A DNA stretch of 64,000 nt from the NCBI GenBank assembly GCA_004764695.1, contig SMSO01000031.1:5624761-5688760 (forward strand). Direction: 5' to 3'. Each line of letters begins with the position of its first letter. Within the stretch, counting starts at the first letter, position 1. Below are positions 3,581 to 60,027 of the stretch, one piece after another. The DNA is from Schizochytrium sp. TIO01. Its lineage: Eukaryota; Protista; Bigyra: Labyrinthulomycetes. Under the pieces are notes generated by a model that saw only the letters and a program-made list of their open reading frames with translations, was not told the DNA's origin and made no database searches. The translations under genes were made by a program, and so were the position numbers.

Positions 3581-5376
3581 TAAAGTTCTCCAGCCTTTCC
3601 GAGTCTTCGGGTTGATCTCCCAAGTCCTTGAATCCCGTTGCGGAGTTTTCGATCTGAGTTTGAGCCTGAGGACTTGACTTGCTTGAAGTTGAGAGCAAAG
3701 TTGAGGGTGGGTTTGTTGAGGAGGGTTCGGGTCTCCTAGGCACTCTTCAAGTTTCTTGACCTGCGCTCTTTCCCTCTTTTCCTCCGGAACTTGAACGTGC
3801 ATGCGCGTTTCCTTCCCCACCGCGTTCTTGCAGCCGCCGCGCGTTCCGGCTTGCCTCGTCTCGCCTCCTGAGTACCATGATGACTCAGTGAGGTCATCGC
3901 CTGGTATCCCGTAAATCCACCTTAAACCATCGCGTCGGAAATCTTGAGAAGTGTTCCCTTTTCATTCTTCTATTTTATTATTTCTTAATGATTTTGGTGT
4001 ATAGCGCCATATGAAGCGCTTTTAGCTCAGTGGAGTCTTCGACCGAGTGCATGCTGCAAAGTACAGAGCTCTCTACTCTAAGAGACAAGTTCGCGAAGTT
4101 TCTGGGAAACATTTGACAGAACTTAGTATATGCTGATAGAGAGAGACACACTCAGATATAAATATTCAATTGTCAAAACAGCTTTTTAGGGAAGGGCGAG
4201 AGGGGGCGAGAGGGGGGATATGTCAATCACAAATCTGGAGTCCTTCACGTATAAAACTTGCCCAACCATGGAGTTTCGGAAACATCAACCCTTCTTCGGA
4301 AATGGATGCCAATTACAGGTATACGAGATATGCAGATTTTATGAAGATTTTATGAAGATTTTTATCCCTGTCCGGAATGAATGGAAATATAGTATTTGAG
4401 AAGTCATTTTGTACACACGTTTATGCAAGGCGAATCCTGTAAGAGAAGGCCTTTGTATTCCAGAGAGCACGTCATTTTGTTTCGCAAAAGCTTCGAATAT
4501 GCAAGTCCAAATTAATCTATTCTTTTAAGGCCTCTCGAAATCAATGAGAGAGAACCCGAAGCTCATCAATCTTCTTGAACATTGCATAGCCTTTCGAAAA
4601 TTTGAGAAGGAAATTTCTAAATGGATCTCTGGTACCGTTGGTATCTATGCTGCAGTCCCCCAGATCTGATGCAGAAATACGGAAGAAAAACTAGCATCAA
4701 CTCTCTTCATTGCCAGGCAAACCCGATACCAACACACCGACGAATATCTAGCTAGTGTCCTATTAAGATCGTTATCTTCTCCTGCTGCCCGAAAGTTCAT
4801 GTTTCAATATCTGCTCCAATTTCCATCGTCTCGATTCTTTCTGAAGATAATCATAATAATAGTATTAACACTAATATGAAGTGAGCCTCTGTCCTTCTAA
4901 GTTCTCAAATACCTCAGGCTTGTGCTACCTTAAACATGCAAATGCTTCTGTTTCCCTTTTTTCCCTTTTCTCTCATGTACTAAGTAAGCCACTTTCAGAT
5001 GTGGGTACTGTTGTGGGTACACAGGGAGTATCTGATTTGCTATGGCCATGTTACTTGTTACTGTGGGGGGTAAGTGATCTACTTTTGGTGCGTTTTTAAA
5101 TTTTGAAGGAGTTAAAAAATAATAAAAACAAAAAAAAGGCGCTCCACGGATCATCGTGAAAAGATAGGTGTTCACGGCACCAGTGATCCGCCCGTACGAA
5201 ATGCAACAGCTCCCCCACTCTGCGCTCCAAAGCCAAGCGCAAAACGCACTCAAGCCCCGTTATCACCAAACTCCACCTCCTCCGCTTATCCATCCAACAA
5301 GCCACCACTACTTTTCCCCCTACTAGATCCAAACCCCCCCGCCAAATGCAACGCATTGTTCCAGGAGTTCCATACC

Positions 5377-5438
5377 TCGAACTGGGATTCAAATTGGGTT
5401 TCGAATTGGGTTTCGAATTGGGTTTCGAATTGGGTTTC
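5377..5438. repeat. 12-bp tandem repeat (TCGAATTGGGTT) x~5
   Basis: Read directly; first two copies degenerate. Confidence 0.9.
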
Positions 5439-5779
5439 AAAAGTCCATCTTGGAGCCCAAATTGCGGTTCTGCGCGTGGACCAAGCCCGACTCTCCTGCG
5501 CCGCGAGGGCGGCGTTGACCGGGCCGGGCACGCCGCCAGCTAGCCGCGTGCCTGCGTGCCTGCCTGCCTGAGCCCTGAGTCCGTTTTCAAAAAGGCGCCG
5601 ACCTGGAGCGAGCGAGCTGGGCCGCGCGATGTCCTGGAAGGCGCCTCGCTGGTACGAAGAGCTGGGTGGAACCGGACTCGACCCCAGCTCGAGGCTCGCT
5701 GCAGCAGCAGCGAGAGCGGCATCGCTCTCTCTGCCAAGATCGCCATGATCTTGACCCAGTCCGTCGAGCTAGCTGCGCC

Positions 5780-5841
5780 CGACCTCGAAATCGACCTCGA
5801 AATCGACCTCGAGATCGACCTCGAAACCGACCCCGAAACCG
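5780..5841. repeat. 12-bp tandem repeat (CGACCTCGAAAT) x~5
   Basis: Read directly; copies degenerate toward the 3' end. Confidence 0.85.
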
Positions 5842-7046
5842 GGACCTCCCTCGAGCGAAGCTTGCTTTCTCTGCGGCCGAGCGCTTGGTCAGCGGCGGCG
5901 GCGAGACCAGCGCAGCGAGATTTCTGCCAGACGGACAGCCATGGCTACGCTCAAGCAAACCAGCCAAAGGACGAGGCCTGCGAGATGGGCGCGGGCAGCT
6001 CGACATTTCCACTGACAATCAATCGACCACTCGGTCGGGCATTCATTCGATCGATCGATCGATCGATGGAGGGATTCCTTCGCCCACGCATCCAGAAAGC
6101 TGCGCCGACCGATGTGGAGGGAGATTGACGTATCGGCATCGCCACATCCTCACTCTGCGGTCAAGAGCGGCGACGATTTGGGTGCAGCGAGAGCTTGTCC
6201 TTTGCGGCGAAGGACAGGAGACGAAGGAGAGGAGACGAAGGAGAGGCCAGGCGAGGAGCTCTTGCGGGTGGACATTCACTCTCACTCACTCACTCCCTCC
6301 AGCCAGCCAGCCAGCCGCCTGGAGGGATGGATGGACACCGGCTGGCTGGTGAGGCTGCGCGAACGAGAGCCTCGCGGGCGGCGGTCGCGGAGCCATGCTC
6401 GCTCGAGGCTCTGTGCGGCGTGCTCCACGGCGAAGGGATCGCGAGCAATCGCACGCAGGCTGCAGGCCGCTCGTTCCTTGCCAGGCAGGCCCTCTGCGGC
6501 GGCGCTCTCAGCGCTGAAAGGAGCCGAGCCTGCGTCAAAATTGACGCTGAGGTTGACGTCGAGGTTGAGGTTGCGGCCGGCGCTTCCCAGAAGACGGAGA
6601 CCACGGCGACCTGGAGGACGGAGAAGCTCAAACGAAGTCGCCCTTGTCGCGAGCCACCGCCGTGCTCTGTTTGCGGCGTTCACGGCAGCGGGCCTGCCTT
6701 CGGAGACCCGCGGGAGAGGGAGTTGGAGACCCTGGAGCCCTCGAGACAGCGAGGGACTCGGGCAGCTCGACAGCGCAGCACAGCCCCGGCGCCGCCACTG
6801 TCGAGTCAAGACCAAAGCAGACCAGGCCAGATCAAGACCGGCGACCGGCGGAGGAGGGAGCGTGCGTGCAGCTGGAAAACTGCGAGGAGCTCGTGAATGA
6901 TCTGAGCGAGGCTGGCTCGCCAAGTCACAATTGTAAACCCGGGCAGGCAGGCAGTCAGTCAGTCGATAGGCAGATAGGAACCTTTCATCGCGGCCAACTC
7001 ACTTCCGCTCCTACAGCTGAGGCTGCTACAACTTGAACTCCTTGAG

Positions 7047-7133
7047 CAGAATTTCAGAATGTCAGAATGTCGGAATATCAGAATGTCGGAATATCAGAAT
7101 GTCAGAAGGTCAGAATGTCAGAATGTCAGAATA
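7047..7133. repeat. 8-bp tandem repeat (CAGAATGT) x~11
   Basis: Read directly; variants CGGAATAT and CAGAAGGT. Confidence 0.9.
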
Positions 7134-7224
7134 TGTTTCTGTGTGTGCGCGCGCGTGTGCACAGCAACATCAGTTTCGAGTTTCATCGCCAAATCGCCGA
7201 CAGCCGTTCGGTCTGCGATTCTTG

Positions 7225-7400
7225 ATTCACTCACTCACTCAGTCAGCTCAGAACTCGCGTCTAAGCGACCATTCATCATTCATCCATTCATTCATCGATT
7301 CATCCATCCATCTAAGATACCCACACATTCATCCATCCATTCATTCATCCATTCGCCAACGATGAACTCATCCCATCATCCATCCATCCATCCATTCATT
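7225..7400. repeat. Degenerate (TCAT/CCAT/TCAC)n tetranucleotide tract
   Basis: attcatcattcatccattcattcatc... low-complexity run. Confidence 0.75.
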
Positions 7401-7417
7401 CTGTATGTCAGTATGGT

Positions 7418-7460
7418 ATTTATGCAGCATTTATGCAGAATTTATGCAGTATTTATGCAT
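7418..7460. repeat. 11-bp tandem repeat (ATTTATGCAGN) x4
   Basis: Read directly. Confidence 0.85.
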
Positions 7461-8337
7461 ACCCAAAGAGCTCGCATGCCTGAATACCGAATCGTAGCGC
7501 GAAGTCGGAGTCTGTTTCGGCGGCGCGAGCGCAAAGTTCCTTAGGAGAACTGGGAAGAAGAAGAAGAAGGAGAAGAAGAAGAAGACGTTCACGAAGAAGA
7601 TGCGGGAAAAGAAAGCGAAGGTGCCAATAAAACAAGCAACCTGACGAGCTGGCACCGCCCTCGAAGAGACGGTCGATGGGATCGATCAACGCAGTTGGGC
7701 CAATTCAGAAACAGACACAGTCTCCAACGCAAGGAATGGACGAACTTGGTGGTTGGGTGAACGAGCGAATGGTGAATTCATTTTAATTGACGAAGCGAAT
7801 GGACGATCGAACGAATGATCGCTGAGGCGAGAAACTGCGATGGAAACGGCCTCCTTCCTCGCTCGCACCCGCAGTACTAGCGACTGAGGGGACCCTTAGA
7901 AGAATGTTAAGAACTGCTAAAGAAGTGGGGTGCCAGCCAGACGGCCAGCGACGCGCACGGCAAAAGGCGCTCTCCACACAGCACATGGGGTCTCCAGGAT
8001 CCCGCAGTGCTGTGGTGGAGGAGAAAAAGAACATGCATCGCGAAACAGGTGGGGAAAGGGAACCTACAGGGGCGAGGATAGAGCGAGCCGCAGATTGTGG
8101 AGACGACAGCAAATCCGAATCGAAGGAAATTGAGATTCGAAGAACCACATACTGCATTGCATTGCGCCGTGTTGCGTTGCACTGCGTTGCATTGAATCGA
8201 TTTCAAACAAGAGTTGAGCTGCGGCGTGCGCAGATAGAAGAGCGGGCTAGGAAATTTGTGGCGATAGTGACGTCGTGGTAGTGAAGGACAACTTGCTCGA
8301 AGGTTAGTGCAGCTCATTGGTCCAAGTTCTAGGCCAG

Positions 8338-9096
8338 ATGCTACAGCTCCAACACGGGTGGGCCCGAGCAAAGCACTCTATGCGCAGAAGAAATGGGTCT
8401 GCCAACAGCAGCAGTGAGCTTGAGGCCCTGACCATGCGGGACCATGCATCTGATAGTAGCATGCACATGGAGAACCACCGAGGCGATCTGGAGCTCAATC
8501 TTAACTTTAGTCGTCAGCAACAACAATTCCAGCAAGAAGAGCAAAACTGCCGTGACGCACGGGTCGAGGAAGATGGTGTTAAGCATAAACGATGGACTGC
8601 TTTACGCAAAGGAATGCACTCACGTGGTCAACAACGCAAGCAAAATGAGAATCAGGGCAACCGAAAGCACCAGCTCAAGACAAACTTTGAAGATCTCCCC
8701 ATGTCACCTGTTATGGCTCTCTCGCCAACCCTCGAGCTCTACAAAGCCCAGTTTGAGGCTGCACTTGCGCAAAGCGTTGACCAAGAAAACCAAAGACGTT
8801 TGGCCAACCATATTGTCAAGGAGACAAGTGACGGTGGTATTCGCTGGGAGCAGGACGATGACGAGGATGATGACGCGGAAGACTATGTGCTGGACTTCAC
8901 TGCTTGCGGCGACATCAAGCTTCCTGACGACGACATAGATCTTGCGGCGGAAAAACATTTTAGCCTTGATCTTGCCGACAAATCCTCTGCGCGCCGCGGC
9001 CGGGTGCACGCCATTCGCCCTAGTGTCGTTGCACCCTTGGTCTCCAAAACTCGGCGCTCATCTCCTCGCAGAATCCGCGCCGCTCTTCACCTTTGA
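8338..9096 (+). CDS. Hypothetical protein (~252 aa), largely disordered, with an acidic patch
   Basis: Long ORF with protein-like composition (Q run, DDDEDDDAEDY), followed by an AT-rich 3' region. The first in-frame ATG is at 8338. No domain recognised. Confidence 0.55.
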   Translation: MLQLQHGWARAKHSMRRRNGSANSSSELEALTMRDHASDSSMHMENHRGDLELNLNFSRQQQQFQQEEQNCRDARVEEDGVKHKRWTALRKGMHSRGQQRKQNENQGNRKHQLKTNFEDLPMSPVMALSPTLELYKAQFEAALAQSVDQENQRRLANHIVKETSDGGIRWEQDDDEDDDAEDYVLDFTACGDIKLPDDDIDLAAEKHFSLDLADKSSARRGRVHAIRPSVVAPLVSKTRRSSPRRIRAALHL

Positions 9097-11777
9097 ACAA
9101 AAAAAGTAAATGCCATACAAAGCATAGCCTCAAAGCACCACCGATCTTTTTTATCCGTATCAGATAATTCCGGGCGGTGCTTCTATATGCTTTGAGAAGA
9201 GGCAACTGTCCTTTCATATTAAGCAAGCCTTCTACTTAAAGGTGAATACACAACCCAACAACTTGTTTATTGATCCTCAGTCAACAAGATTTGCTTGCAA
9301 TATCTTGCAAAGTCTCACTGTGACCAGGAGAAAAGCTCATAATATTCAGCTTTGACTGGATACATATTCTGTCGTAAAGGATATGAAATTGATTGACGAA
9401 GAAGATGGAAAACGCTGGTAGAACACCTCCCTGAATTCTGGCAGAAAACCTATAATACCAAATATTGGAACAAGCTTTTCCAGTGACAAACACAGAAACA
9501 AGATCACTTATCTATAAAGGAGCGAAGAGGCATCCTCTTTCGTAGTAGCTTTTGACTTTATAGTCCTCTACACAGCGGCCGTCTCAATATGACTGGCAAG
9601 ATGGTATGATGGAATAAATGAATTGATGCACAAAACACCAGGTCAGCAAGAATAATAATATATTAATGATGATAAAAACCAATGTGCAAGTTGCACAAGA
9701 TGGGAAAGGCCCACGCCTGATTGAAAATTGCCCCTAAAGAATGATTCAAATACCCTACTTCCGCATTTTACACAACTCAAAAGAAGATATAATATAATCT
9801 ATATGTAGTATGATCCAACCTTACATTCTTTTTATGGCTGTAGCTATCATCATTGCGCTATCCTTTTCTCCACTTTATAAAGGTTTAGTTCGTTGTTCTT
9901 ATTGAAAATCAATATTAGTCCAAATCTTGATTAACTAATAGGTCTTCATATACTAGCTCAGTTTTCTATTGGGAAGAGGATTAACCGGCATGCAACAGTT
10001 ATTTTAATCGCTAGCAATGTTAGGATTTCTCTTAAAGGATTCAAACAGAACCTTTTGAGCTTACATGATCGAAATTGTATTTGTCAATTTAGAACGTATG
10101 ATTCCGAAAATTACATAAACCTGTCAATTCAATGCTAGGAACTATCTATACCCTACTTACACCTTATCGTCCCCAAACCCAATTTACTTTCCTGATGTTA
10201 TCACAAGTTGTACGATACTGCACTTTGCCCCAGTCTCTACTGTTCTCTGAATGAGGAGGTAACACTATCATGCAATCAACAAATGATCTCCATGATAGTT
10301 ATTGAAACCTGCGCTGCCCGGCCCGGGCCATTTTCTTGTACTGAGTAAGTCAGTGTCGAGCTCCCGCTGCCTCCCATTTCGTCAGCAAACACTTTTCCAT
10401 TCGCAACGCAGAAGCAGGCACGATGGTAACAAAACTATCACCCAGGCAGTACAGATATGAATGAACTTCTGTCGTGAGCAACAAGGTGGAAGAAACACTC
10501 GAACGAAGTAAATGTCCCACTTCCTGCCCTTATCCCCACTTGCGCTGAGTCCAGCGAATGACGCTTTTTAATTGCCTCAGCACACTAAGATAAGCAGCGG
10601 CTGGCTCGTTGCCTTGACCACTTCTGAGCATTCCTCACCCCAGCCCCGGCCCCGCCCCGCCTCAGTCTCACGCAGCCGAAAGCACTGCAGTCTTCCGTAG
10701 AGACGTCCGTGGAAATCATCCATTCTCAAAATGTGCAAGTATTTATTGACCACCTCCTAGTCTTTCTGCTTGTCAATGTTCTAAAAAATGATAAACCATC
10801 ACATCCTCCACGCTACCCAAGCTGGCAGTCATGTCTTCAAGATCGACACCTTGGGCACCGCAACGCCGAGTTCTCTTCTTTGCAACACGCACGCTCACCG
10901 GTTCTCGAACCCAATTAATCAGCCATCATCATCTCTCTGACGTTCTCTCACGCCATTGCAATAAGAACGATAGTTTTAGTTTTTAGTTTTTTTTTTTAAA
11001 TTAAAAAGTTGTTTTCCCTTTAGTTTGATTTATATCTTCATGGTACTCTAAAATGAGCCCGAGACCCAGCTAAGCGGCACCCGACTTACCTTGACAAAGC
11101 TCAGCGGGCCTTGGCCAAGGCCTGCGCTCTCTTAAGCTTGCCAGAGCTCTCGGAGGCGTGTATATCTTTCATTCAAATAGACGACCTTGGCAATCAATTC
11201 TGTAGCCTTGAAAGACCCATGTTGGCGATCTCGACATGACTAAGAGTCAGTTACGCGCCCATAGCACTCCCAAAAGGTGTGTAACACGACCAATCTTCAA
11301 TTACGATCGCCAAAGTTCAATCTCTTTTCGCAATACTTCTCGAATCAAATGATCTCCTGTCATCTCAAAAAAAAAGGGAGGTCTCACGAATAGATGTCGC
11401 TGGATGGAAGAGGGCTGCGACTGCAACAAGTTCTTGGTGATCAGCAGAAGAAGATGGTGAGAACTCGAAGAAGCTCATCCACAGGAGGATGGACTATTAT
11501 GGAGTGTCCTGAGGGAGCCTGAAAAATGTACCGTTGAGCAAATTCTTCTGAGGCGATTGATTTCTACAGGAGGAGAGAGGCAAAGTAAATTGACTGCCTC
11601 CGGCACCTGGGTGCCCTAGGCGAGAGACTTTGAGGTGTCAGCGCAGCGGGAGATCCTCGCGCTGGAGGACGGTTGCTGCCTGCAAAAACTCTGCACGGCA
11701 GCAGCATTGCAGGCTAGGCTCTTGGGGTCGCAAAGCTTTGGAGCAGAAGACCAACTGCCGCAAAATAAGAAGTCACC

Positions 11778-50346: not shown

Positions 50347-52341
50347 ATGGCAAGAACAACATCGGCGATTGAGCATGCGAAGCGTGTATTGCGGCATCAA
50401 GATACCTCACGTTGCGCGCAGGGAGCTGTGATGGTTGCGCAGGAGCTCCTCAGGTCCCAGACTAGGGCCTCTGCTACTGGTATTGGGCCATCGCTTCGCT
50501 CTCATGCCGCAGGTCTCGGCCAAGTGGCAGAATTTTTAGTCGCCAGGTTCGCTCCCGGCTTGTCGCCTTCAACATCTGCAGCTGCAGGGTCACCTGACGC
50601 TGCTGGCGCTACAAATGGAAGCGCTTACGCGGATATCGACCTCTCGGCCTTCGACGCAGCAGCCGCAGAGAAGCCTGGTATCTTAGACCACTCTAAAGTG
50701 AACGGTGAAAGCGCATCGTCGCCGTCGTCGATCCCGCCTTTGAGCTCCAAAACAACTATCTCGTCGGTACCTTCTTCAGAGGATTTTTCAAAAGTACCCT
50801 TAGAACCCTCAACAGCCTCTAGCACGCAAACCAAGCTCGAAACCGGTCCTGGTGTTACGAAGATCGAGAACGAGAACGCAAAGATGCCTTTGCAAACAAA
50901 TGCAACGTCGAAGAGTGCCGAATTGAGTGGACTTTATGACGGCGATGGGGATATCCCGGTCACAGCTGGACGTGAGCAAGCGGTGCCATCAGGACCTATT
51001 TCTCGCGTGGTGGGCTTTGGTAGGCTTGCGGCAGGCCTTGCAGCAGGCACAGTTGGTGAGGCTGTACGCCGCGGCGTAAGGGGGCGTCCTCAGCATACAG
51101 GCGATGCAGGGACTCCTGGAACCAGCAGTGGAGGAGGCATGCGTGACGTGGTACTATCGAATGCAAATTCAGAGCGCATTGCAGCAACGCTCTGCCGCAT
51201 GCGTGGGGCAGCACTTAAGCTCGGGCAGATGCTTAGCATCCAGGATGAGACAGTGCTCCCACCGCAACTTAGCCATGCTCTTGAGCGTGTGCGTCAAAGC
51301 GCTGATATTATGCCAGCTAGGCAGCTCGATCAAGTCATGGCAGCTGAGCTGGGCCCTGATTGGCGTATGAACTTCGTCAAGTTTAACGATAAGCCCTTTG
51401 CAGCTGCCTCGCTTGGACAGGTACATCAGGCACTCCTTAAGACGCCCGAAGGACCCATTCCTGTTGCCGTCAAAGTGCAATTTCCGGGAGTCGCAGATAG
51501 CATTGACAGTGATCTTGCTAATCTAAAGCGCCTTGCTGATATTACAGGTATCTTCCCGCGCGGTCTCTTCATCGATCGCATCATTGAGGTCATGAAGGAG
51601 GAGCTTCGTGAGGAATGCGATTATCTCAGCGAGGCCAAGCATCAGAAAAAATTCCGTGAGATTCTCAAGAACGACTCTGAGTCATTCTTTGTCCCTCGCG
51701 TCTTTGACCAAACTACCACCTCTCGCATCCTCACCACAGAGCTGGCACGCGGTGTTGCTATTGACAAGGTTGCCAAAACTCTTTCGCAAGAACAACGCAA
51801 CCGGATCGGCCGTTTGCTCTTGCATCTTTCGCTTAAGGAGCTCTTTGACTTTCGCTACATGCAAACTGACCCCAACTTCAGCAACTATCTATTCGACGAA
51901 AAAACGGGCCGCATTGTTTTGCTTGATTTTGGAGCAACGCGTGCTTATGGTCGCGAGTTTGTTGATGACTACCTCGAACTTGTTTGGGCAGCTAGCAAGA
52001 GCGATCGGGGCGCAATTCTTGATTACTCAATCAAGCTTGGATTTCTTACCGGAGATGAGTCCCAAGCGATGAAAAATGCCCACATTCAGAGCGGCCTTGA
52101 AATTGGTCGTCCGTTTCAGCAAGAGGGGCCCTTCGATTTCCGTGGGTCGCGCATGGTTAGCCAAATGAGTAAGCATGGAGATACCTTCATGAATGAGCGT
52201 CTTACACCCCCTCCTAAGGAAGTATATAGCCTCCACCGTAAACTTTCTGGCGCGTACATGACATGCATCAAGCTCGGCTCCATCTTCCCATGCCGAGACC
52301 TTCTTGTAAAATCTTACGAAAACTACCACAAGCAACAGTAG
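50347..52341 (+). CDS. COQ8: ABC1/UbiB atypical kinase COQ8 (ADCK3/4)
   Basis: MRGAALKLGQMLSIQD (KxGQ motif), FAAASLGQVH, VAVKVQFPGVADSIDSD, MQTDPNFSNY, LLDFGA, RLTPPPKEVYSLHRKLSG. The Arg/Ala-rich N-terminus fits mitochondrial targeting. Confidence 0.95.
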   Translation: MARTTSAIEHAKRVLRHQDTSRCAQGAVMVAQELLRSQTRASATGIGPSLRSHAAGLGQVAEFLVARFAPGLSPSTSAAAGSPDAAGATNGSAYADIDLSAFDAAAAEKPGILDHSKVNGESASSPSSIPPLSSKTTISSVPSSEDFSKVPLEPSTASSTQTKLETGPGVTKIENENAKMPLQTNATSKSAELSGLYDGDGDIPVTAGREQAVPSGPISRVVGFGRLAAGLAAGTVGEAVRRGVRGRPQHTGDAGTPGTSSGGGMRDVVLSNANSERIAATLCRMRGAALKLGQMLSIQDETVLPPQLSHALERVRQSADIMPARQLDQVMAAELGPDWRMNFVKFNDKPFAAASLGQVHQALLKTPEGPIPVAVKVQFPGVADSIDSDLANLKRLADITGIFPRGLFIDRIIEVMKEELREECDYLSEAKHQKKFREILKNDSESFFVPRVFDQTTTSRILTTELARGVAIDKVAKTLSQEQRNRIGRLLLHLSLKELFDFRYMQTDPNFSNYLFDEKTGRIVLLDFGATRAYGREFVDDYLELVWAASKSDRGAILDYSIKLGFLTGDESQAMKNAHIQSGLEIGRPFQQEGPFDFRGSRMVSQMSKHGDTFMNERLTPPPKEVYSLHRKLSGAYMTCIKLGSIFPCRDLLVKSYENYHKQQ

Positions 52342-53509: not shown

Positions 53510-54637
53510 CTATTCCTCTAGGTTTGATTGGCTCTCCTCATCATCTGCGTTCATAACTTGGTCTTCTGGAACCATGCCAGGTATTTTGGTTTGTAGAAGG
53601 TCTCCATGCGACGTTGAAGAGCCAAGCTGTGACACCTCCCCAATTTCTGGCATCCTGTTGGTTGTCACCAATGCGGAGGAAGATTGAGATAACTTTGTGC
53701 GAGGCTTTAATCGCATACTTGCAGTACTACTCCGTATGACTGCAGAGTTTGCAAAGGCTACATTCGAGGCTGAGCGCTTGAGAACATCTGAGCAATACTT
53801 GTTGTCGGTCTTTGTCGGTTGTTGCCGACTAGAAGTTCGTGCAATCAGTTTATCCTCAATGTCAACAGATGGCATCGGAAGAACAGCTTCTGTTCGTGAA
53901 ATTCCAGGAGAGCTCTTGTCACTGCCACGTTGATAAAATGTATAATTTGACAGCACAAGATCGCGTTGAACCATAGCTGCTGGGCAAAGTCGAGCCAGTG
54001 CATCATACAACGGAAACGCGATATTATTGATAAATCCAAGTTGCATCTGAGGGTCAAAACTTGCCATAAAACTTGTGACTGGTACCCCTACATGTTTTTC
54101 AAGCTCGGTTTGACTCATGAATTCCTCAGTAATACGTGTTACCCATAGCTTATAAGTTGGGAGGTCACGAGCACAATTAGAAACGTCAGCGCACTTAATC
54201 AGAACTTCCATCATAACCGCTCCTGCTTCATCCGACGTGAGCCTCGCTTTAAATGAGGAAGATGCAGTCAAACTAGATGCACAACTTGCGGTACCATCAT
54301 CGTCTTTCATTGTAGCAAGAGAATCCATATATGTGTTCAATTGTTCCACAAATACGCCATGATTTTCCACACTAGTGGCAAGGACTAATCTTGTGATCAT
54401 AGGCTGCACTCTAAGACGAACTTCCGTCAGTTCACCCTGAAGTAAGGCTTCTATAAGTGGTCTGGCTGTTGCTGCATGGAAGTTCTCCAAAATAGGATCA
54501 CTGAATTGTTTGCAGATTTCATTGTTCGTAGCCTTGAGAAAGCCAGCATTGACACCAGGATGACCAACATCGTGTACAGCTGCTGCAATGAGCATTACAA
54601 GACGATCCACCTTGCTGAAGTCTCCACGGGGGGCCAT
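53510..54637 (-). other. Segment 3: C-terminal half of the PDEase_I domain plus a disordered tail
   Basis: IAAAVHDVGHPGVN..FL, LENFH, IKCADVSN, W..RITEEF..Q..LE, QMQLGFI. Confidence 0.92.
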
Positions 54638-57600
54638 TTCTATCCATATTCATCTTTTCAACAGGAGGAGCAACAGAAGAACTAGAAATATCACTTGTTA
54701 CGTCCACTTCACCTGCTGTTTTACCCATTGATACATAGTTTGATGCATCAGCTCTCTTCATTGACATTGTCATGGCGTTGTTTGGGTTATACAAGACTAA
54801 TTTCTGATGAAGGTGTTGCAATAAAAACACATGACATGCTTGTACTACGTCTGCAGCATGCATGCTATTGTGATAAGGATTAGTTGGATAGAGACGCTCG
54901 ATCTCTTTAGCAAATCGATCAACCATATTAATGTCAAATTCAAACAACTCATAAAACCCGTGCTTTAGAAACAGCAGACGGAGCATGAGATGTAACGGTG
55001 TACCACAAGCCACGCGCTCAAAGGCGAAGATATCAAAACTCCACGAATCAAGCTGAAGGGCTAATGAAGACATTGCATCTCGCTCATGAAAATTCATGCG
55101 CCTAGACCAAGCATCAACTGCCACTGGATGCGCATACATATATAATGCATGCACAGCTTTTAGAGATCCAGTCTGGTACCCATCATTGCTGAAACCTGAG
55201 CTAGAGTACATTGAACTAATGGAAGATCGAACCATGGCAACCCCGTTCCAGTTTCGATTCTTTCCGTCCGATTTACCGGAGTCATGTGCTTTAGATTGTG
55301 AGATTTCGTTTCGTGAACTGCTTGGCTTTGATGTCCAGCGCATTCCTCTCATACGGAAGCCACCCCCTCCCTCAGTAGCAGCAGTAGCAGCTGCTGTAGC
55401 AGCGGTGGAAGCAGCTTCAACAGCTTTTGAAGGTTCAGGGCTGCGCGAGAATCGACGCATAAAAGAGTACAAATTCTCCTTTGTATCGTCAATAGCTTCT
55501 TGTCCCTCTAGAGTATCATCTTCCCAATCTTCGTCAGACGATTTCGATAATCTACGATTCATCGATGGTAGGCGTGCAAGAATTCGCTGCGACGCCCGAA
55601 ACGGTACATGATCTAATGGGGCAGATGCTACCGTGGCCCCAGGTCCCATGCATCTCCAAAACGGGATGCAACAACTTATATGTTTGTCCTGATAATGCTT
55701 CACGAGCTTATCTCCGGACTTGGACTTCATTTTTGCTGCGTCTTGAGAAGAGCTAGCACTTCCAGGTCTGCGCCACTTGTTCAACATCCTTTGTTCATTG
55801 GATGCATTCTTAGATTCCAGATTCCCATCCATTGTAGCACGGATGCTAGGTGCCCGAAGAATGCTTGCACGACGCGTTGATTGACGAATAGAGCGTAATG
55901 TTTCGACGAACTGCGAAGTGGTATCTTCAGCAACAGCTGCAAGAGGGGTCGGAGTGCTTGTCAGATGTCCAGAGCTTCGTCGATTTGAATGAATAAAGCT
56001 TTGAGTCAAATCACCAATCCGAAGCGAAGGTCGTCTCATACTAGCCCAAATCATGGATCGCGACTCATTTGGAGGGGGTTCTTGTTTGAGGCTAATTCTT
56101 GGTGACGACATTTTTTTCCTTGTGTTTCCATCGGAAGAAGTGGCTTCAGCCTGCTCACCGGCTGGTGAATTTGGTTCTACCCTCAAAGCTGGTAAACGCA
56201 TCTCCAAGGTTAATTTTAGGCCGTCGAAGTAGGTATCATGTGCTTGTTGAAGCTGTTTTGCTCCAAGGTGGTGGAACAATAGCATGGCATTGATCTGAAG
56301 CGATAAGGGACTTGTTCGTTCAAGCTTCTCAGGTCCTGTGGAAATGCACTCACTCCAGGACTCTAACACTCCAATTGCTGACTGATGAAATCGAGTGCGG
56401 TGGGCTAACAAAATCTCGCGATATGTCTTGTCTCGCATGATAATGTCACAAAATCGGTAGCATCTATCATTTCCTCGCGAGGCCTCGTATGTGACTCCCG
56501 CAGAGGATACCACCTTCATATATGGACAATATTCCTCGTGCTGTAATGCAAATGAAGCATTGTTGGGAATCTACCTCGGGCCTTGGAACCTCAATAATAA
56601 TACCCATTTGTTGAAGACGCTGCAGGCGAGCTTCTAATTTAAACAGTGCATTGTCTTCTATTTCGACTACAGGTGGATCGTTCGGAGACCCAAATCGGAT
56701 TTCAGGAGGTATTTTGATATCTCGTTCCGCATCTTTAAAAGGAAACACTGCAGCAAGCATGCCTAAATCAAAATAGAGCCCGAAAGCCCCTAACCCTCGT
56801 GCGAGGACGCATGCGCAGCGTAGCACAAATTTCTCTGCAACTTGAAGGTGGTCCAGTACCTGTGCCTCCCAGCGGGTGTTGCAAGCCTTTCCACAAGCTG
56901 TCAACACCTGCAAACGAACGGTATATGACATACTGATGAGACGTGCACGCAATTCAGGCATTATTGAGTTTTGTGATGCGCGCCTTGTTAGATTGATGTT
57001 ATTATTCTTGTCAACCCCTTGAGAAATTGAAGTCTTGGTCTGTACAGGAAGGCCATCCACTACTTTCAATCCTCGCAAGGCATCAATGCACACCATCATG
57101 CGCTGATAATTCCCCCCTGTAATACGATGAAGTGTTCGCACAAGCGGTGCAGACGCCCGAGACACCATGTATCTATTCGAAATGAGTGTATGCGCCTGTA
57201 AGAGATCCAGCGGTTGATCTTCGAGAACTATTGTACGCATGGCCTGCATGAAGCTGACATAGTCATCATTAAGACCAGAAAAGGAGGGGCGACGGGCCAA
57301 AGGGTGCTTGGGAGTCAGTGAAACCACGAAGAAGACACCAGGAAATAGTTTCTTGCCCCTGTTCTCTCGAAGAGAAGCCGCAACTCCGTTTGTGAAAAGG
57401 GATACTGTTGCCTCTGAAAGTGTTGGAGCAGGGTTATGGCTTGCAGCAGCAGCAGCGGCAGCGGCAGCAGCTGATGGTGCCAGTGCATCAAGCTGCACAG
57501 AAAACTCACTTGTAAGATAGCGAATAATCTTCCAGTCCAAGTCTGTGAGAAAGTGTGCGTCTTCTAATGTAAGAATGAGAGGCAATTTGGCATTGGTGAT

Positions 57601-60027
57601 GGCTTGGATCATATTCCGAGCCTCTCTCACCACTGAGTTTATTTCGATTGGCTTAAGACTGAAATACTGGGAAGCCACATCAATATCACGAACAGCTTTC
57701 GGCCAAACTTTGAAACATGGATGGTTTAGAAATTTGGTGTCGACCTCAACGTTGTGCTTTCGCGCAAACGCAAGAATGCCACGCAGCATACGATCTGCGA
57801 CAGGTGCTCCAAACATAAGGGAATCTGACAAAAATGCTTTGGTTCGCAACAAGAGACATGAAGGAGCTGCTGCTTGGGTAGAAGAAGAGGCTGTTGAAGA
57901 AGCATGCGGAAGCCATTTTGACCGCTTGTCTGAAATGTAACCGTGCTTTACCGACTTGGCATTAAGTTTACCCAAGTCTCCATGCAGCTGCTGGACAGAC
58001 ACAATATCATTTTGTAATACATAATGTGGCTCCATGTGCAGTTCTTCCCAAATATGCATGCTAAGCTGATGCATCGTGTCCTCTGCGGCGACAGAGTCTC
58101 GACTAAAAATTGCTACTGTACTTGGATGCCGCCCACGTGAGCAAAAGAAGTTGTCAATTGCAAGCATGGCATCAATATGCCTGTGTCTCCATGTCTCATT
58201 CATCGCCGGTGCTGAGTGACGACGTGTAAAGTTGGCAGAGATCTTCATAACAAGGTTTTTCTCGCTTTCTAGAGCAGCCCATCCAGGTTGATAGCATTGA
58301 ACAGCCTCGTTTTTACCTTTCAACTCAATACCTCCAAGAGAATGAAAAATGAAATCCTGCGCGGACTCTTCACAAGCAACACGCGTTGTTTCATCGCAAA
58401 CGATCCGGCCAATGAAACCATCGCTCATCTTCAGTTTTTCCCCACTTTTATTTGCTGCCTGCATAAAACGAGCACTGACATTTACAGAGTCACCAAGCAA
58501 GGTATATTCCTTACGCGACCCACTACCCACGGGGCCACATAAGGCTGTACCTGTCGTCACACCAATATATCGCTTAGTGGAGGAATCAATATCGCGGAGA
58601 GTTTTGACTGTTCGCAAAGCGAATGCTATTCCACGAGCAGGGTCATTCTCATGGGATAATGGAGGAAGACCAAGAGCAAGTAAAACCGTGGTTCCTTTGT
58701 CGTCCACGAGAAACTTGTTAACGCTCGCTTCCACACGATAAGCCTCGCGCTGGACGCTTCGGAAGACAGCCTGAACACGTTGTAGCTGATTTTGAGATAT
58801 TGACACCAAATCATGTGGGTTGAAGCCAAGATTTAAGAAAATAGTTGTAACCTCGCGGACTTCTGCCATATATGCAAGGTTTGAATAGAGGAATGGTGTA
58901 ATTGCGGCAGGCACATACCGTTGAAGCTGACGAATTTCATGGTTGCTAGTAAGCACAGACCGCTTAATAGAAATATTACGCACGCGTTTCTTGCAAGCAC
59001 TAATAACCGCAGAACCACTTGGAAGGTGTTTTGCATCAAAACGATCTTGGATCAGCGCCCATACCTCAGGAGAAACAATAGTTTGGCCAGGTTCGCTCTG
59101 ATTTTCACCAGCAAATGCTTGCAAAAGTGCTTCACCACATGGCACAATTTCAATACGATTCTGCTCACCACCTACATGAAGAATAGAGGCCTTTCCTACA
59201 CCGATACCTATTTTAATGGAGAATTGCACTCCAGCGGCTAACTCAGCACCATGGAGTTCTTCTTGTAGCTGTAGACCAGCTTGTGTTGCTTTGGACGCCA
59301 TGGTGGCAAGGTCAAGATTATTTTTGTCATCGTACTCAGGCTGCCAAAACACAAGCATTGCATCACCTGCAAACTTCATAATATCACCACCTCCTTTACC
59401 AAGTAACTTATTGATTCGTTCAAAATATCGATTGAGAAAGAAACCAAGTTTCTCAGATCCTGCACTACCCTCTGCGCTGAGTCGTTCTGTTAATTTGGTA
59501 AAGCCACTTACGTCCAGAAAAATAGCAACAGTCTCAAGCTCTTGATTATAAGGAGTGAGGTCCCATACCTCTTCTACCTCACGCAACATTCGTTGCACAA
59601 AATCAACCAAATGCCAAGATGCAAAGTCTTGAACAATTTTGGAACCTGAGTGTCCATCAATATTTTCTGTTGATTGTGTACTCTCCATCAGTGCAGACCT
59701 CCTTCGTGTAAGTGCCCGACTCTTTGAGGCTGGTGTAGGTGCTAATTCGAGTGGAACATCAGTTCCGCTAGATGTGCGTTGTCTTGCAGCCGGTTCTAAA
59801 TCTTCATCGCTACTGATATCATCTTCAGAAGAGGTCACGGAGGATGATCTAGTGTTTGACCTTCTCAAGGATGCGGACGCCGGTAGCTGAAGTACAGAAC
59901 CACTTGCGGTGAAGGTTTGAGTAGAGTCCGTAGCTTGGCTGGAGTATACCCGAGAGTTTGCAAGTGCAACATCCTGTACTCCTTCACCTTCACCTTCATC
60001 TGCTGCATCAACTTTGTGCTCTGACAT
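53510..60027 (-). CDS. Soluble adenylyl cyclase (ADCY10-like) - class I cyclic nucleotide phosphodiesterase fusion gene, ~2170 aa, split into three overlapping ORFs by two +1 discontinuities
   Basis: ORFs 56467-60027, 54519-56519 and 53510-54637 overlap on the same strand. Each break falls inside a domain whose other half continues in the next ORF. Confidence 0.8.
54634..56519 (-). other. Segment 2: end of the sAC-type helical region, disordered linker, N-terminal half of the PDEase_I domain
   Basis: YRFCDIIMRDKTY..ILLAHRTRFH; LDSWSFDIF; NPYHNSMHAADVVQ. Confidence 0.88.
56467..60027 (-). other. Segment 1: tandem class III cyclase domains C1/C2 (sAC/ADCY10 type) plus a degenerate STAND/AAA module
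   Basis: C1: FLDVSGFTKLTE...DIMKFAGDAMLVFW. C2: VNKFLVDDKG...GLPPLSHE...IGVTTG..CG.VGS..RKEYTLLGDSVNVSARFM. Walker-B-like LILTLEDAHFL. Confidence 0.93.

What the first reader, a model, noticed from the sequence alone, without database searches (positions are those of the whole stretch)
53510..60027. One gene that both makes and destroys cAMP: soluble ADCY10-type cyclase fused to a C-terminal class I PDE
Seen: three overlapping minus-strand ORFs whose domain halves interlock, giving C1-C2 cyclase / decayed STAND / linker / PDE with no obvious TM helix. The cyclase keeps both metal aspartates (LDVSGF, KFAGDA), the adenine-selecting Lys (VNKF), the sAC-type Thr (EYTLLG) and N...R (VNVSAR). The PDE keeps YHN..H, HD..H, E..H, CADVSN and the invariant Gln (QLGFI); the usual LATD reads LATS. 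Established: the best-known AC/PDE fusion, CAPE of Marchantia and other streptophytes with flagellated sperm, has the opposite order (PDE then AC) with membrane segments, and animal ADCY10 has no PDE. Inference: an independently evolved, self-terminating cAMP pulse or nanodomain generator, possibly for zoospore flagella. I cannot tell whether it has already been described in stramenopiles.
Basis: partly seen in the sequence, partly recalled or inferred. Interest (0 to 1): 0.85.

Follow-up and report, generated by a model that had tools for sequence, protein, structure and literature searches.

The report
Soluble cyclase fused to phosphodiesterase
A marine protist (thraustochytrid) gene joins a cAMP-making enzyme of the 'soluble adenylyl cyclase' type to a cAMP-destroying phosphodiesterase in one 2,171-residue protein. 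The fusion is real and belongs to a wider, apparently undescribed family, but in this assembly two single extra bases break the gene into three reading frames.

Summary
Three overlapping minus-strand ORFs (60027-53510) carry a tandem sAC-type cyclase, a STAND-like module without a P-loop, a disordered linker and a class I PDE.

The frame changes are not introns. A public 2,171-aa protein (P0001) reads straight through. The window has one extra base at each of two short homopolymers. The two sequences otherwise differ by five residues, all in the linker. An assembly error is the likelier cause (about 0.75); a strain-specific lesion is possible.

The fusion is conserved. Orthologues include Hondaea fermentalgiana GBG28547.1 (1,915 aa), a Cercozoa MAG protein and environmental ORFs. 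All 32 cyclase+PDE proteins found have the cyclase first. They fall into three PDE clades spread over stramenopiles, Cercozoa and dinoflagellates.

New here: the window's clade has replaced the near-invariant Asp of the PDE 'LATD' motif in 10 of 10 members. The clade of the same-genome paralogue has replaced the invariant Gln instead. The cyclase lacks sAC's bicarbonate arginine.

Activity, expression and any zoospore role are untested. The scan already reported the paralogue (s1-839227) on other DNA of this genome. No paper in the held library describes this architecture.

The parts
59551..60027 (-). Start codon and Ser/acidic-rich N-terminal region (residues 1-159). It includes an RRxS site (R-R-R-S at residue 108) that is conserved in Hondaea.
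   Evidence: P0001 starts at the same Met. No Pfam domain even at E<=5. RRxS sites listed.
58165..59577 (-). Tandem C1-C2 class III cyclase of sAC (ADCY10) type, residues about 151-621. Catalytic residues are D172, D222 (C1) and K438, T509, N516, R520 (C2). The equivalent of sAC R176 is F305.
   Evidence: Pfam Guanylate_cyc x2. ADCY10 structures match at E 4.6e-32, with alignment. Columns across the fusions; coordinates. 71% identity to Hondaea.
56382..58164 (-). STAND-like module without a P-loop, residues about 622-1215. It spans the first frame change. A Walker-B-like L-T-L-E-D is kept; Walker A is replaced.
   Evidence: BLASTP E 9e-19 to the P0003 region that carries AAA_16 and an intact Walker A. 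Walker A column. 45% identity to Hondaea.
56565..56567 (-). Frame break 1: a run of three C (minus strand) where the intact public protein requires two. Reading passes from the ORF1 frame to the ORF2 frame.
   Evidence: P0001 reads ...E-V-D-S-N-N-A-S-F... across this point. The frame switch is confined to 56470-56570.
55050..56381 (-). Poorly conserved, probably disordered linker (residues about 1216-1655), rich in Ser/Arg and RRxS sites. It holds all five residue differences from P0001.
   Evidence: No Pfam domain at E<=5. Only 37% is alignable to Hondaea. Differences; RRxS count.
54638..55049 (-). First part of the class I PDE catalytic domain (residues 1656-1740, with Y-H-N-x-x-H) followed by a 60-residue non-conserved insert.
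   Evidence: Pfam PDEase_I positions 1-26. PDE7A structure matches at E 7e-15. 86% identity to Hondaea before the insert, 21% in the insert.
54634..54635 (-). Frame break 2: GG next to a run of six C, where the intact public protein requires a single G. Reading passes from the ORF2 frame to the ORF3 frame.
   Evidence: P0001 reads ...M-D-R-N-A-P-R-G-D-F... across this point. The frame switch is confined to 54522-54649.
53918..54633 (-). Main part of the PDE catalytic domain (residues 1798-2036): HD..H, E..H, L-A-T-S, C-A-D-V-S-N and the invariant Gln.
   Evidence: Pfam PDEase_I positions 27-231, E 2.4e-43. PDE4C/4B/4D/8A structures match at E 1e-23 to 1e-19. Catalytic columns. 70% identity to Hondaea.
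53510..53917 (-). Ser-rich C-terminal tail and stop codon.
   Evidence: Identical to the end of P0001. No Pfam domain.

Best explanation
The locus is one intron-less gene for a soluble protein of about 2,171 residues. From N to C it carries a sAC-type pseudo-heterodimeric C1-C2 adenylyl cyclase, a STAND-derived scaffold that has lost its nucleotide-binding P-loop, a 440-residue disordered linker rich in RRxS sites, and a class I cyclic-nucleotide phosphodiesterase. In this assembly the frame is broken twice by one extra base at a short homopolymer. This is most probably a consensus error of the long-read assembly, so the organism most likely makes the full-length protein.

Shown: the architecture, the continuity of the ORF in a near-identical public sequence and in diverged orthologues, retention of the catalytic residues, and equal sequence constraint on both catalytic domains.

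Inferred: the cyclase makes cAMP (Lys/Thr pair as in sAC) without sAC-style bicarbonate control (Arg176 is Phe). The tethered PDE hydrolyses it, so the protein sets a local, self-limited cAMP signal. The clade-wide loss of the LATD Asp has retuned the PDE, probably making it slower or weaker, so that synthesis is not simply cancelled. The RRxS sites may allow feedback from a cAMP-dependent kinase.
For: The domains and motifs are confirmed.

P0001 is a 2,171-aa protein from public run assemblies (longest contig 38 kb). It is identical to the window over residues 1-1154 and 1798-2171. It differs only by five linker residues and the two one-base length differences.

Orthologues have the same order of domains: Hondaea GBG28547.1 (1,915 aa, 57% identity over the ORF1 query), P0003 (1,691 aa), Cercozoa MAG MES1910297.1 and others. 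All 32 cyclase+PDE proteins found are cyclase-first. The window's clade is recovered in both the cyclase tree and the PDE tree, so the two domains have been inherited together.

Identity to Hondaea is 71% for the cyclase and 70-86% for the PDE core, against 36% for the alignable part of the linker. All metal-binding and acid residues of the PDE are kept in 10 of 10 clade members.

Assembly indels occur elsewhere. Two of 18 dynein heavy-chain genes have a frame change inside the contiguous DHC_N2 domain with no room for an intron, one of them at a two-base homopolymer. The 0 changes in 1,528 domain residues against 5 in 643 linker residues argues against pseudogene drift.

There are nine RRxS sites against 2.5 expected (3 of 2000 shuffles reach nine).
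Against: No RNA or read evidence could be obtained. Transcription as one unit and the true homopolymer lengths in this strain are therefore untested.

Two indels in one 6.5-kb gene is more than the rough genome-wide rate suggests. That rate is about one per 30-100 kb of dynein coding sequence, which predicts two hits in about 1-3% of genes this size.

The LATD Asp is Asp in 22 of 23 free PDEs sampled and absent here, so the PDE could be slow or inactive. No enzyme activity has been measured for any member of the family. The substrate (cAMP or cGMP) is inferred only from the Lys/Thr pair and from the best structure matches being cAMP-specific PDE4, PDE7 and PDE8.
Confidence: 0.6

Rival explanations
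1. The two frameshifts are real in this strain or haplotype. The gene is a recently inactivated pseudogene here, or yields only a truncated cyclase-STAND product of about 1,186 residues, while close relatives keep it intact.
For: There are two independent one-base insertions in one gene, while three other long ORFs in the window (2054, 1060 and 957 aa) are unbroken. P0001 comes from a different strain or haplotype, with five residue differences, so a real polymorphism is possible.
Against: There is no substitution in 1,528 residues of the cyclase, STAND and PDE regions against five in 643 linker residues, and there are no premature stops within the frames. This pattern fits continuing purifying selection plus indel-only errors. 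Frame changes with no room for an intron also occur inside conserved dynein domains of the same assembly. Other first-stage notes report many +1 shifts at short homopolymers in this genome (unchecked).
Confidence: 0.2
2. The gene is intact, but the PDE domain of this clade is catalytically crippled and acts mainly as a tethered cAMP-binding or regulatory module. It would be a product sensor or buffer for the cyclase rather than a true terminator.
For: The Asp of the LATD motif is replaced in 10 of 10 clade members (S, A, N or C), whereas 22 of 23 free PDEs keep Asp. The Pfam score is lower than for the paralogue PDE (150-160 against 270 bits). From memory, not checked here: alanine substitution of this Asp lowered kcat in PDE5 mutagenesis.
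Against: Every direct metal ligand, the general-acid His and the purine-clamping Gln are kept in all ten diverged members. The PDE core is as conserved as the cyclase. That is what one expects if hydrolysis is still selected for.
Confidence: 0.25
3. The two domains act on different nucleotides, for example the cyclase makes cAMP and the PDE removes cGMP, or the reverse. The fusion would then be a cross-talk node rather than a make-and-destroy pair.
For: Substrate choice was not measured. sAC relatives in Dictyostelium are guanylyl cyclases (own knowledge), and some hits are named SgcA. PDE9, which is cGMP-specific, is also among the structure matches.
Against: The Lys/Thr pair matches human sAC, an adenylyl cyclase. 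The best PDE structure matches for both halves are the cAMP-specific PDE4, PDE7 and PDE8.
Confidence: 0.1
4. Programmed +1 ribosomal frameshifting or RNA-level correction restores the frame, so the extra bases are real and regulatory.
For: Both shifts go in the same (+1) direction. Other first-stage notes in this genome propose programmed +1 shifts (unchecked).
Against: A near-identical sequence encodes the same protein in a single frame with no shift, and so do all orthologues. A dynein gene in the same assembly needs a shift in the opposite direction. That fits random indels, not a mechanism.
Confidence: 0.03

Closest known systems
CAPE (COMBINED AC with PDE) of Marchantia and other streptophytes with motile sperm; CAPE-like proteins of Saprolegniales (PMC5159850, PMC8115329)
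   Same: One polypeptide with a class III cyclase and a class I PDE. The proposed role is confining cAMP in space and time.
   Different: Per PMC8115329, CAPE-like proteins in Saprolegniales have the same organisation as CAPE. The protein here has the cyclase first, a tandem C1-C2 cyclase of sAC type, a STAND-derived module between the two enzymes and no TM helix. I did not place CAPE sequences in my trees.
Mammalian soluble adenylyl cyclase ADCY10 (structures 4clf, 4oya)
   Same: Tandem C1-C2 in one chain, with the same catalytic residues including the Lys/Thr pair, followed by a STAND-type region (E 4.6e-32).
   Different: ADCY10 has no PDE. Its bicarbonate-binding Arg176 is Phe here. Own knowledge: the ADCY10 STAND region keeps a P-loop; here it is lost.
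Same-genome paralogue (L016:876-8789:-, 2,638 aa) and its clade, e.g. Hondaea GBG26248.1 and Cafeteria KAA0162236.1 (scan finding s1-839227)
   Same: Cyclase first, then STAND, then a C-terminal PDE. The cyclases are about 40% identical.
   Different: The paralogue clade keeps the P-loop and has PH (and often C2, GYF or WW) domains. It keeps the LATD Asp but has replaced the invariant Gln. The PDE domains are only 25% identical.
Oomycete FYVE/PH-bearing sAC-like cyclases (e.g. Phytophthora and Pythium 'Adenylate cyclase', about 1,500 aa)
   Same: These are the closest named relatives of the cyclase domain outside the fusions (40-43% identity), with an AAA_16 STAND module.
   Different: They have no PDE domain. 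They carry FYVE and PH domains instead.
Bacterial GGDEF-EAL proteins (own knowledge; analogy only)
   Same: Synthesis and breakdown domains for one cyclic-nucleotide messenger sit on one polypeptide, and one of the two domains is often degenerate or retuned.
   Different: The folds are unrelated, the messenger is different (c-di-GMP) and they are bacterial.

Membership tests
Class III nucleotidyl cyclase, sAC (ADCY10) type | Two catalytic domains (C1, C2) in tandem on one chain | tested here: met
   Pfam Guanylate_cyc has two stretches. Two aligned domains to ADCY10 chains cover residues 35-211 and 265-420.
Class III nucleotidyl cyclase, sAC (ADCY10) type | Two metal-binding Asp in C1; Lys plus Thr (base recognition) and Asn/Arg (ribose and transition state) in C2 | tested here: met
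   D172, D222, K438, T509, N516 and R520 align to sAC D47, D99, K334, T405, N412 and R416 (the sAC numbering is my own count of the aligned chain).
Class III nucleotidyl cyclase, sAC (ADCY10) type | Bicarbonate site Lys95 + Arg176 | tested here: not met
   The Lys is kept (K218). Arg176 aligns to F305, and to Phe in all 11 fusion-clade sequences aligned. It is therefore sAC-like in fold and chemistry, but sAC-type bicarbonate activation is not expected.
Class III nucleotidyl cyclase, sAC (ADCY10) type | Cyclase activity and ATP preference | not testable with these tools
   Needs an enzyme assay or cya complementation.
Class I cyclic-nucleotide phosphodiesterase (PDEase_I) | HD-type catalytic domain with H-N-x-x-H, H-D-x-x-H, E-x-x-H, the second metal Asp and the invariant Gln | tested here: met
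   Pfam 159.6 bits for the intact P0001. H1719, H1723, H1818, D1819, H1822, E1847, H1850, D1947 and Q1995 are present.
Class I cyclic-nucleotide phosphodiesterase (PDEase_I) | Conserved Thr-Asp of the L-A-T-D motif | tested here: not met
   Thr is kept and Asp is replaced by Ser (S1885). It is non-Asp in 10 of 10 members of the clade, against Asp in 22 of 23 free PDEs. The consequence for catalysis is unknown.
Class I cyclic-nucleotide phosphodiesterase (PDEase_I) | Hydrolysis of cAMP and/or cGMP | not testable with these tools
   Needs an enzyme assay.
CAPE | PDE N-terminal to the cyclase | tested here: not met
   The cyclase is N-terminal and the PDE C-terminal here and in all 32 fusions found.
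CAPE | Membrane segments | tested here: not met
   The maximum 19-residue Kyte-Doolittle mean is 1.59, so no window reaches 1.6. This is a crude test.
CAPE | Common descent of the AC and PDE domains with plant CAPE | not tested
   No CAPE sequence was obtained. PMC8115329 reports that even the CAPE-like proteins of Saprolegniales arose independently of plant CAPE.
STAND NTPase (AAA_16-type, as in sAC relatives) | Walker A GxxGxGK[ST] | tested here: not met
   The window has S-R-D-S-V-A-A-E-D and Hondaea has C-T-N-A-A-E-A-R-E where P0003, P0008, P0070, P0007, the paralogue and P0010 have intact Walker A.
STAND NTPase (AAA_16-type, as in sAC relatives) | Homology of the whole module to P-loop-bearing relatives | tested here: met
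   BLASTP E 9e-19 over 535 residues to the P0003 region with AAA_16. A Walker-B-like L-T-L-E-D aligns to V-L-D-K. The module is a derived, non-NTPase descendant of a STAND module.

The most novel reading that the evidence does not exclude
Heterotrophic SAR protists (labyrinthulomycetes, bicosoecids, cercozoans, dinoflagellates) share an undescribed family of soluble 'make-and-break' cAMP enzymes with the order sAC-type cyclase, STAND, PDE. In each clade the tethered PDE has been deliberately retuned by replacing a different near-invariant active-site residue: the LATD Asp in the window's clade and the purine-clamping Gln in the paralogue's clade. The fused enzyme would then give a timed or spatially confined cAMP signal rather than a futile cycle. 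The window's lineage has in addition turned its NTP-driven STAND switch into a passive scaffold.
Probability: 0.35. Interest if true: 0.75.

Novelty: new variant of a known kind. Interest (0 to 1): 0.6.

Why it matters
Cyclase and phosphodiesterase on one chain is the simplest possible device for confining a cAMP signal. The only described eukaryotic example, CAPE, has the opposite layout and a membrane anchor.

This work shows a second, soluble and probably independent solution. It is spread over several protist lineages and has clade-specific changes at PDE residues usually treated as invariant. That gives two directly testable questions. What do the LATD Asp and the clamp Gln contribute to PDE kinetics? 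How does a fused synthase/hydrolase avoid a futile cycle?

Thraustochytrids are culturable, and transformation has been attempted in Aurantiochytrium (PMC8534400). The natural variants could also serve as compact parts for engineered cAMP pulse generators.

For the scan, the locus is also a worked example that frame breaks in this assembly are often single-base homopolymer discrepancies rather than biology.

Tried and rejected
- **Intron models.** I listed all GT/GC..AG introns of length 3k+1 that could join the frames. None is needed, because P0001 reads through both junctions with a one-base difference, and the paralogues and orthologues are single ORFs.
- **Joined protein.** I did not build or submit a joined or read-through version of the window's gene. 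The three pieces were searched apart, and the natural intact protein P0001 was used for full-length analyses.
- **Hidden domains.** Pfam at E<=5 on the N-terminus, the STAND-like region, the linker and the tail gave only sub-threshold noise. There is no relic of the PH or C2 domains seen in the paralogue clade.
- **Antisense ORFs.** The ORFs inside the gene on the other strand and the short upstream ORF have no Pfam match.
- **Structure of the STAND-like region.** Alignment A1 of the segment against full-length relatives misplaced the segment onto cyclase columns. I therefore dropped the planned structure prediction and fold search.
- **Literature.** Searches for the role of the LATD Asp by mutant names returned nothing relevant. 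The Aurantiochytrium zoospore proteome paper and its held supplements mention no adenylyl or guanylyl cyclase and no phosphodiesterase. Searches for a description of this architecture found only the CAPE papers.
- **Single or multiple origin of the fusions.** The PDE tree separates the clades, but an AU test does not reject all fusion PDEs forming one clade (p 0.28). This stays open.
- **Other frame-change candidates in the window** (5100-9100, + strand). No Pfam hits, so uninformative.
Full report
**What is in the sequence**

Pfam finds two Guanylate_cyc stretches in the first. It finds the first 26 positions of PDEase_I at the end of the second and positions 27-231 at the start of the third. 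One PDE domain is therefore cut by the second frame change.

The conserved region that follows the STAND-like module in relatives lies just after the first frame change. Both junctions thus interrupt continuous protein modules.

The gene is flanked by AT-richer DNA (37-43% GC against 41-50% inside). A convergent ABC1-kinase gene lies downstream. ORFs on the other strand inside the gene have no family match.

**Why there are three frames**

A search of 1.8 billion representative proteins with ORF1 returned P0001, a 2,171-residue protein assembled from public sequencing runs, with a longest contig of 38 kb. It equals the window's translation over residues 1-1154 (ORF1 frame), 1155-1797 (ORF2 frame) and 1798-2171 (ORF3 frame). 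The exceptions are five linker residues.

At the first junction P0001 reads E-V-D-S-N-N-A-S. This needs CC where the window has CCC (56565-56567). At the second it reads D-R-N-A-P-R-G-D. This needs a single G where the window has GG (54634-54635), beside a run of six C. The frame changes are therefore two one-base insertions, not introns. The intron candidates listed are unnecessary. Paralogues in the same genome are single long ORFs.

**Error or real lesion?**

- *Substitution pattern.* There are no differences in 1,528 residues of the cyclase, STAND-like and PDE regions, and five in 643 linker residues. This is what purifying selection gives, not drift after inactivation.
- *Indels elsewhere in the assembly.* Of 18 dynein heavy-chain loci, 11 have N-terminal and C-terminal domains in one open frame of 3,867-5,003 residues, and 7 are split. 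In two of the split genes the frame changes inside the contiguous DHC_N2 domain with no room for an intron. One of these is at a two-base homopolymer and shifts in the opposite direction.

The assembly therefore carries single-base indels in conserved genes. The rate is perhaps one per 30-100 kb of coding sequence, so two in one 6.5-kb gene is unusual. I put assembly error at about 0.75, a real strain or haplotype lesion at about 0.2, and anything else, such as programmed frameshifting, at a few per cent. Unchecked first-stage notes on this genome report many +1 shifts at short homopolymers.

**The protein**

*Cyclase.* Residues about 151-621 align to human ADCY10 structures (E 4.6e-32). Both C1 metal Asp, the C2 Lys, the sAC-type Thr and the Asn/Arg pair are in place. 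The residue aligned to sAC's bicarbonate-binding Arg176 is Phe here and in every fusion aligned. sAC-style bicarbonate activation is therefore not expected.

*STAND-like module.* Residues about 622-1215 are homologous to the AAA_16-bearing region of relatives (E 9e-19). Walker A has been lost in the window and in Hondaea, while it is intact in P0003, P0008, P0070 and the paralogue.

*Linker.* The next 440 or so residues have no detectable domain even at lenient thresholds. They align poorly between species. Over the whole protein there are nine RRxS sites against 2.5 expected.

*PDE.* Residues about 1656-2036 match cAMP-specific PDE4, PDE7 and PDE8 structures best. The domain keeps every metal ligand, the acid His and the clamp Gln. 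It has a 60-residue non-conserved insert after the first His motif, and this insert is where the second frame break lies. No transmembrane helix is detectable.

**Relatives**

Orthologues with the same layout include:

- Hondaea fermentalgiana GBG28547.1 (1,915 aa), auto-named 'cAMP-specific phosphodiesterase'
- environmental P0003/P0151 (about 1,700 aa)
- a Cercozoa MAG protein, MES1910297.1
- several unnamed ORFs

Identity to Hondaea is 71% in the cyclase and 70-86% in the PDE core, but only 36% in the alignable third of the linker. Both catalytic domains are therefore equally constrained.

Among the proteins collected, 32 carry both domains, and in all of them the cyclase comes first. The PDE tree gives three fusion clades:

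- **Clade A** (the window's clade): cyclase-STAND-PDE.
- **Clade B**: adds PH and often C2, GYF or WW domains. It includes the second fusion gene of this genome (2,638 aa), Hondaea GBG26248.1, Cafeteria roenbergensis KAA0162236.1, a complete MMETSP transcript and a protein labelled Durusdinium.
- **Clade C**: adds ankyrin repeats. It is represented by a Gymnodinium smaydae transcript.

Clade A is also recovered in the cyclase tree, so its two domains have travelled together. An AU test does not reject a single origin of all fusion PDEs (p 0.28).

In this genome only two of about eleven PDE loci and about fourteen cyclase genes are fused.

**A new point about the PDE active site**

| Group | LATD position | Clamp Gln position |
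|---|---|---|
| Clade A fusions | non-Asp in 10 of 10 (S5, A2, N2, C1) | Gln in 10 of 10 |
| Clade B fusions | Asp in all but one | replaced in every member with a residue there (S, T, G or A) |
| Clade C fusions | Asp | Gln |
| Free PDEs | Asp in 22 of 23 | Gln in 22 of 23 |

The pattern was first seen on 41 sequences. It held for the 11 fusion sequences added afterwards. Each fusion clade has therefore changed a different near-invariant residue.

I read this as retuning of a tethered PDE. Loss of activity cannot be excluded without an assay.

**Comparison with what is known**

CAPE and the CAPE-like proteins of Saprolegniales have the PDE first (PMC5159850, PMC8115329). ADCY10 has no PDE. 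Oomycete relatives of this cyclase carry FYVE and PH domains but no PDE.

Full-text searches found no paper describing a sAC-type cyclase fused to a PDE, or cAMP enzymes of thraustochytrids. The proteins do sit in public databases under automatic names.

The scan has already reported the clade B paralogue of this genome (s1-839227), with the same conclusion that the combination is real and undescribed.

**Verdict**

The fusion is real, conserved and distinct from CAPE. It is, however, a member of a wider family, it is frame-broken in this assembly, and it is probably not bicarbonate-regulated. Its function as a pulse generator or in zoospores is untested.

I rate it a new variant of a known kind, with interest 0.6.

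Noticed in passing
L016:876-8789:- (G000:C30:3209875-3217815), and clade B relatives P0010, P0028, P0044, P0198, P0207, P0210 and others: In the paralogous cyclase-STAND-PH-PDE clade the 'invariant' purine-clamping Gln of the PDE is replaced (S, T, G or A) in every member that has a residue at that column. The LATD Asp is kept.
   Followed up: partly
G000:C4:1605681-1605684 (L017) and G000:C35 about 1224770-1224825 (L018): Two dynein heavy-chain genes change reading frame inside the contiguous DHC_N2 domain with no room for an intron. The C4 case needs one more base at a CC/GG run. In all, 7 of 18 dynein heavy-chain loci are split into two or more open frames.
   Followed up: partly
G000:C30:3629169-3630240 (-): Another PDEase_I locus is split between two open frames (504 aa and 267 aa), with about 430 nt between the matched halves. 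This may be an intron, an insert or another frame break.
   Followed up: no
P0044 (CAK9060722.1, labelled Durusdinium trenchii): This 2,642-aa fusion protein groups with the thraustochytrid paralogue, Hondaea GBG26248.1 and the unnamed P0094 in the PDE tree (SH-aLRT 97). Its length is almost the same as the thraustochytrid and Hondaea proteins. This could be thraustochytrid contamination of the dinoflagellate assembly, or gene transfer.
   Followed up: no
window 5100-9100 (+): A chain of overlapping open frames of 150-290 aa runs in all three frames on one strand, with no Pfam match. It could be a low-complexity gene, a multi-exon gene or another frame-broken gene.
   Followed up: partly
window 50347-52341 (+): The downstream, convergent neighbour is an ABC1/ADCK-type atypical kinase (Pfam ABC1, E 2e-65).
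   Followed up: yes
P0156 (Corallochytrium limacisporum Clim_evm147s210): This protein is listed with HNOBA (PF07701) plus PDEase_I. A haem-NO-associated domain on a PDE is an unusual pairing.
   Followed up: no
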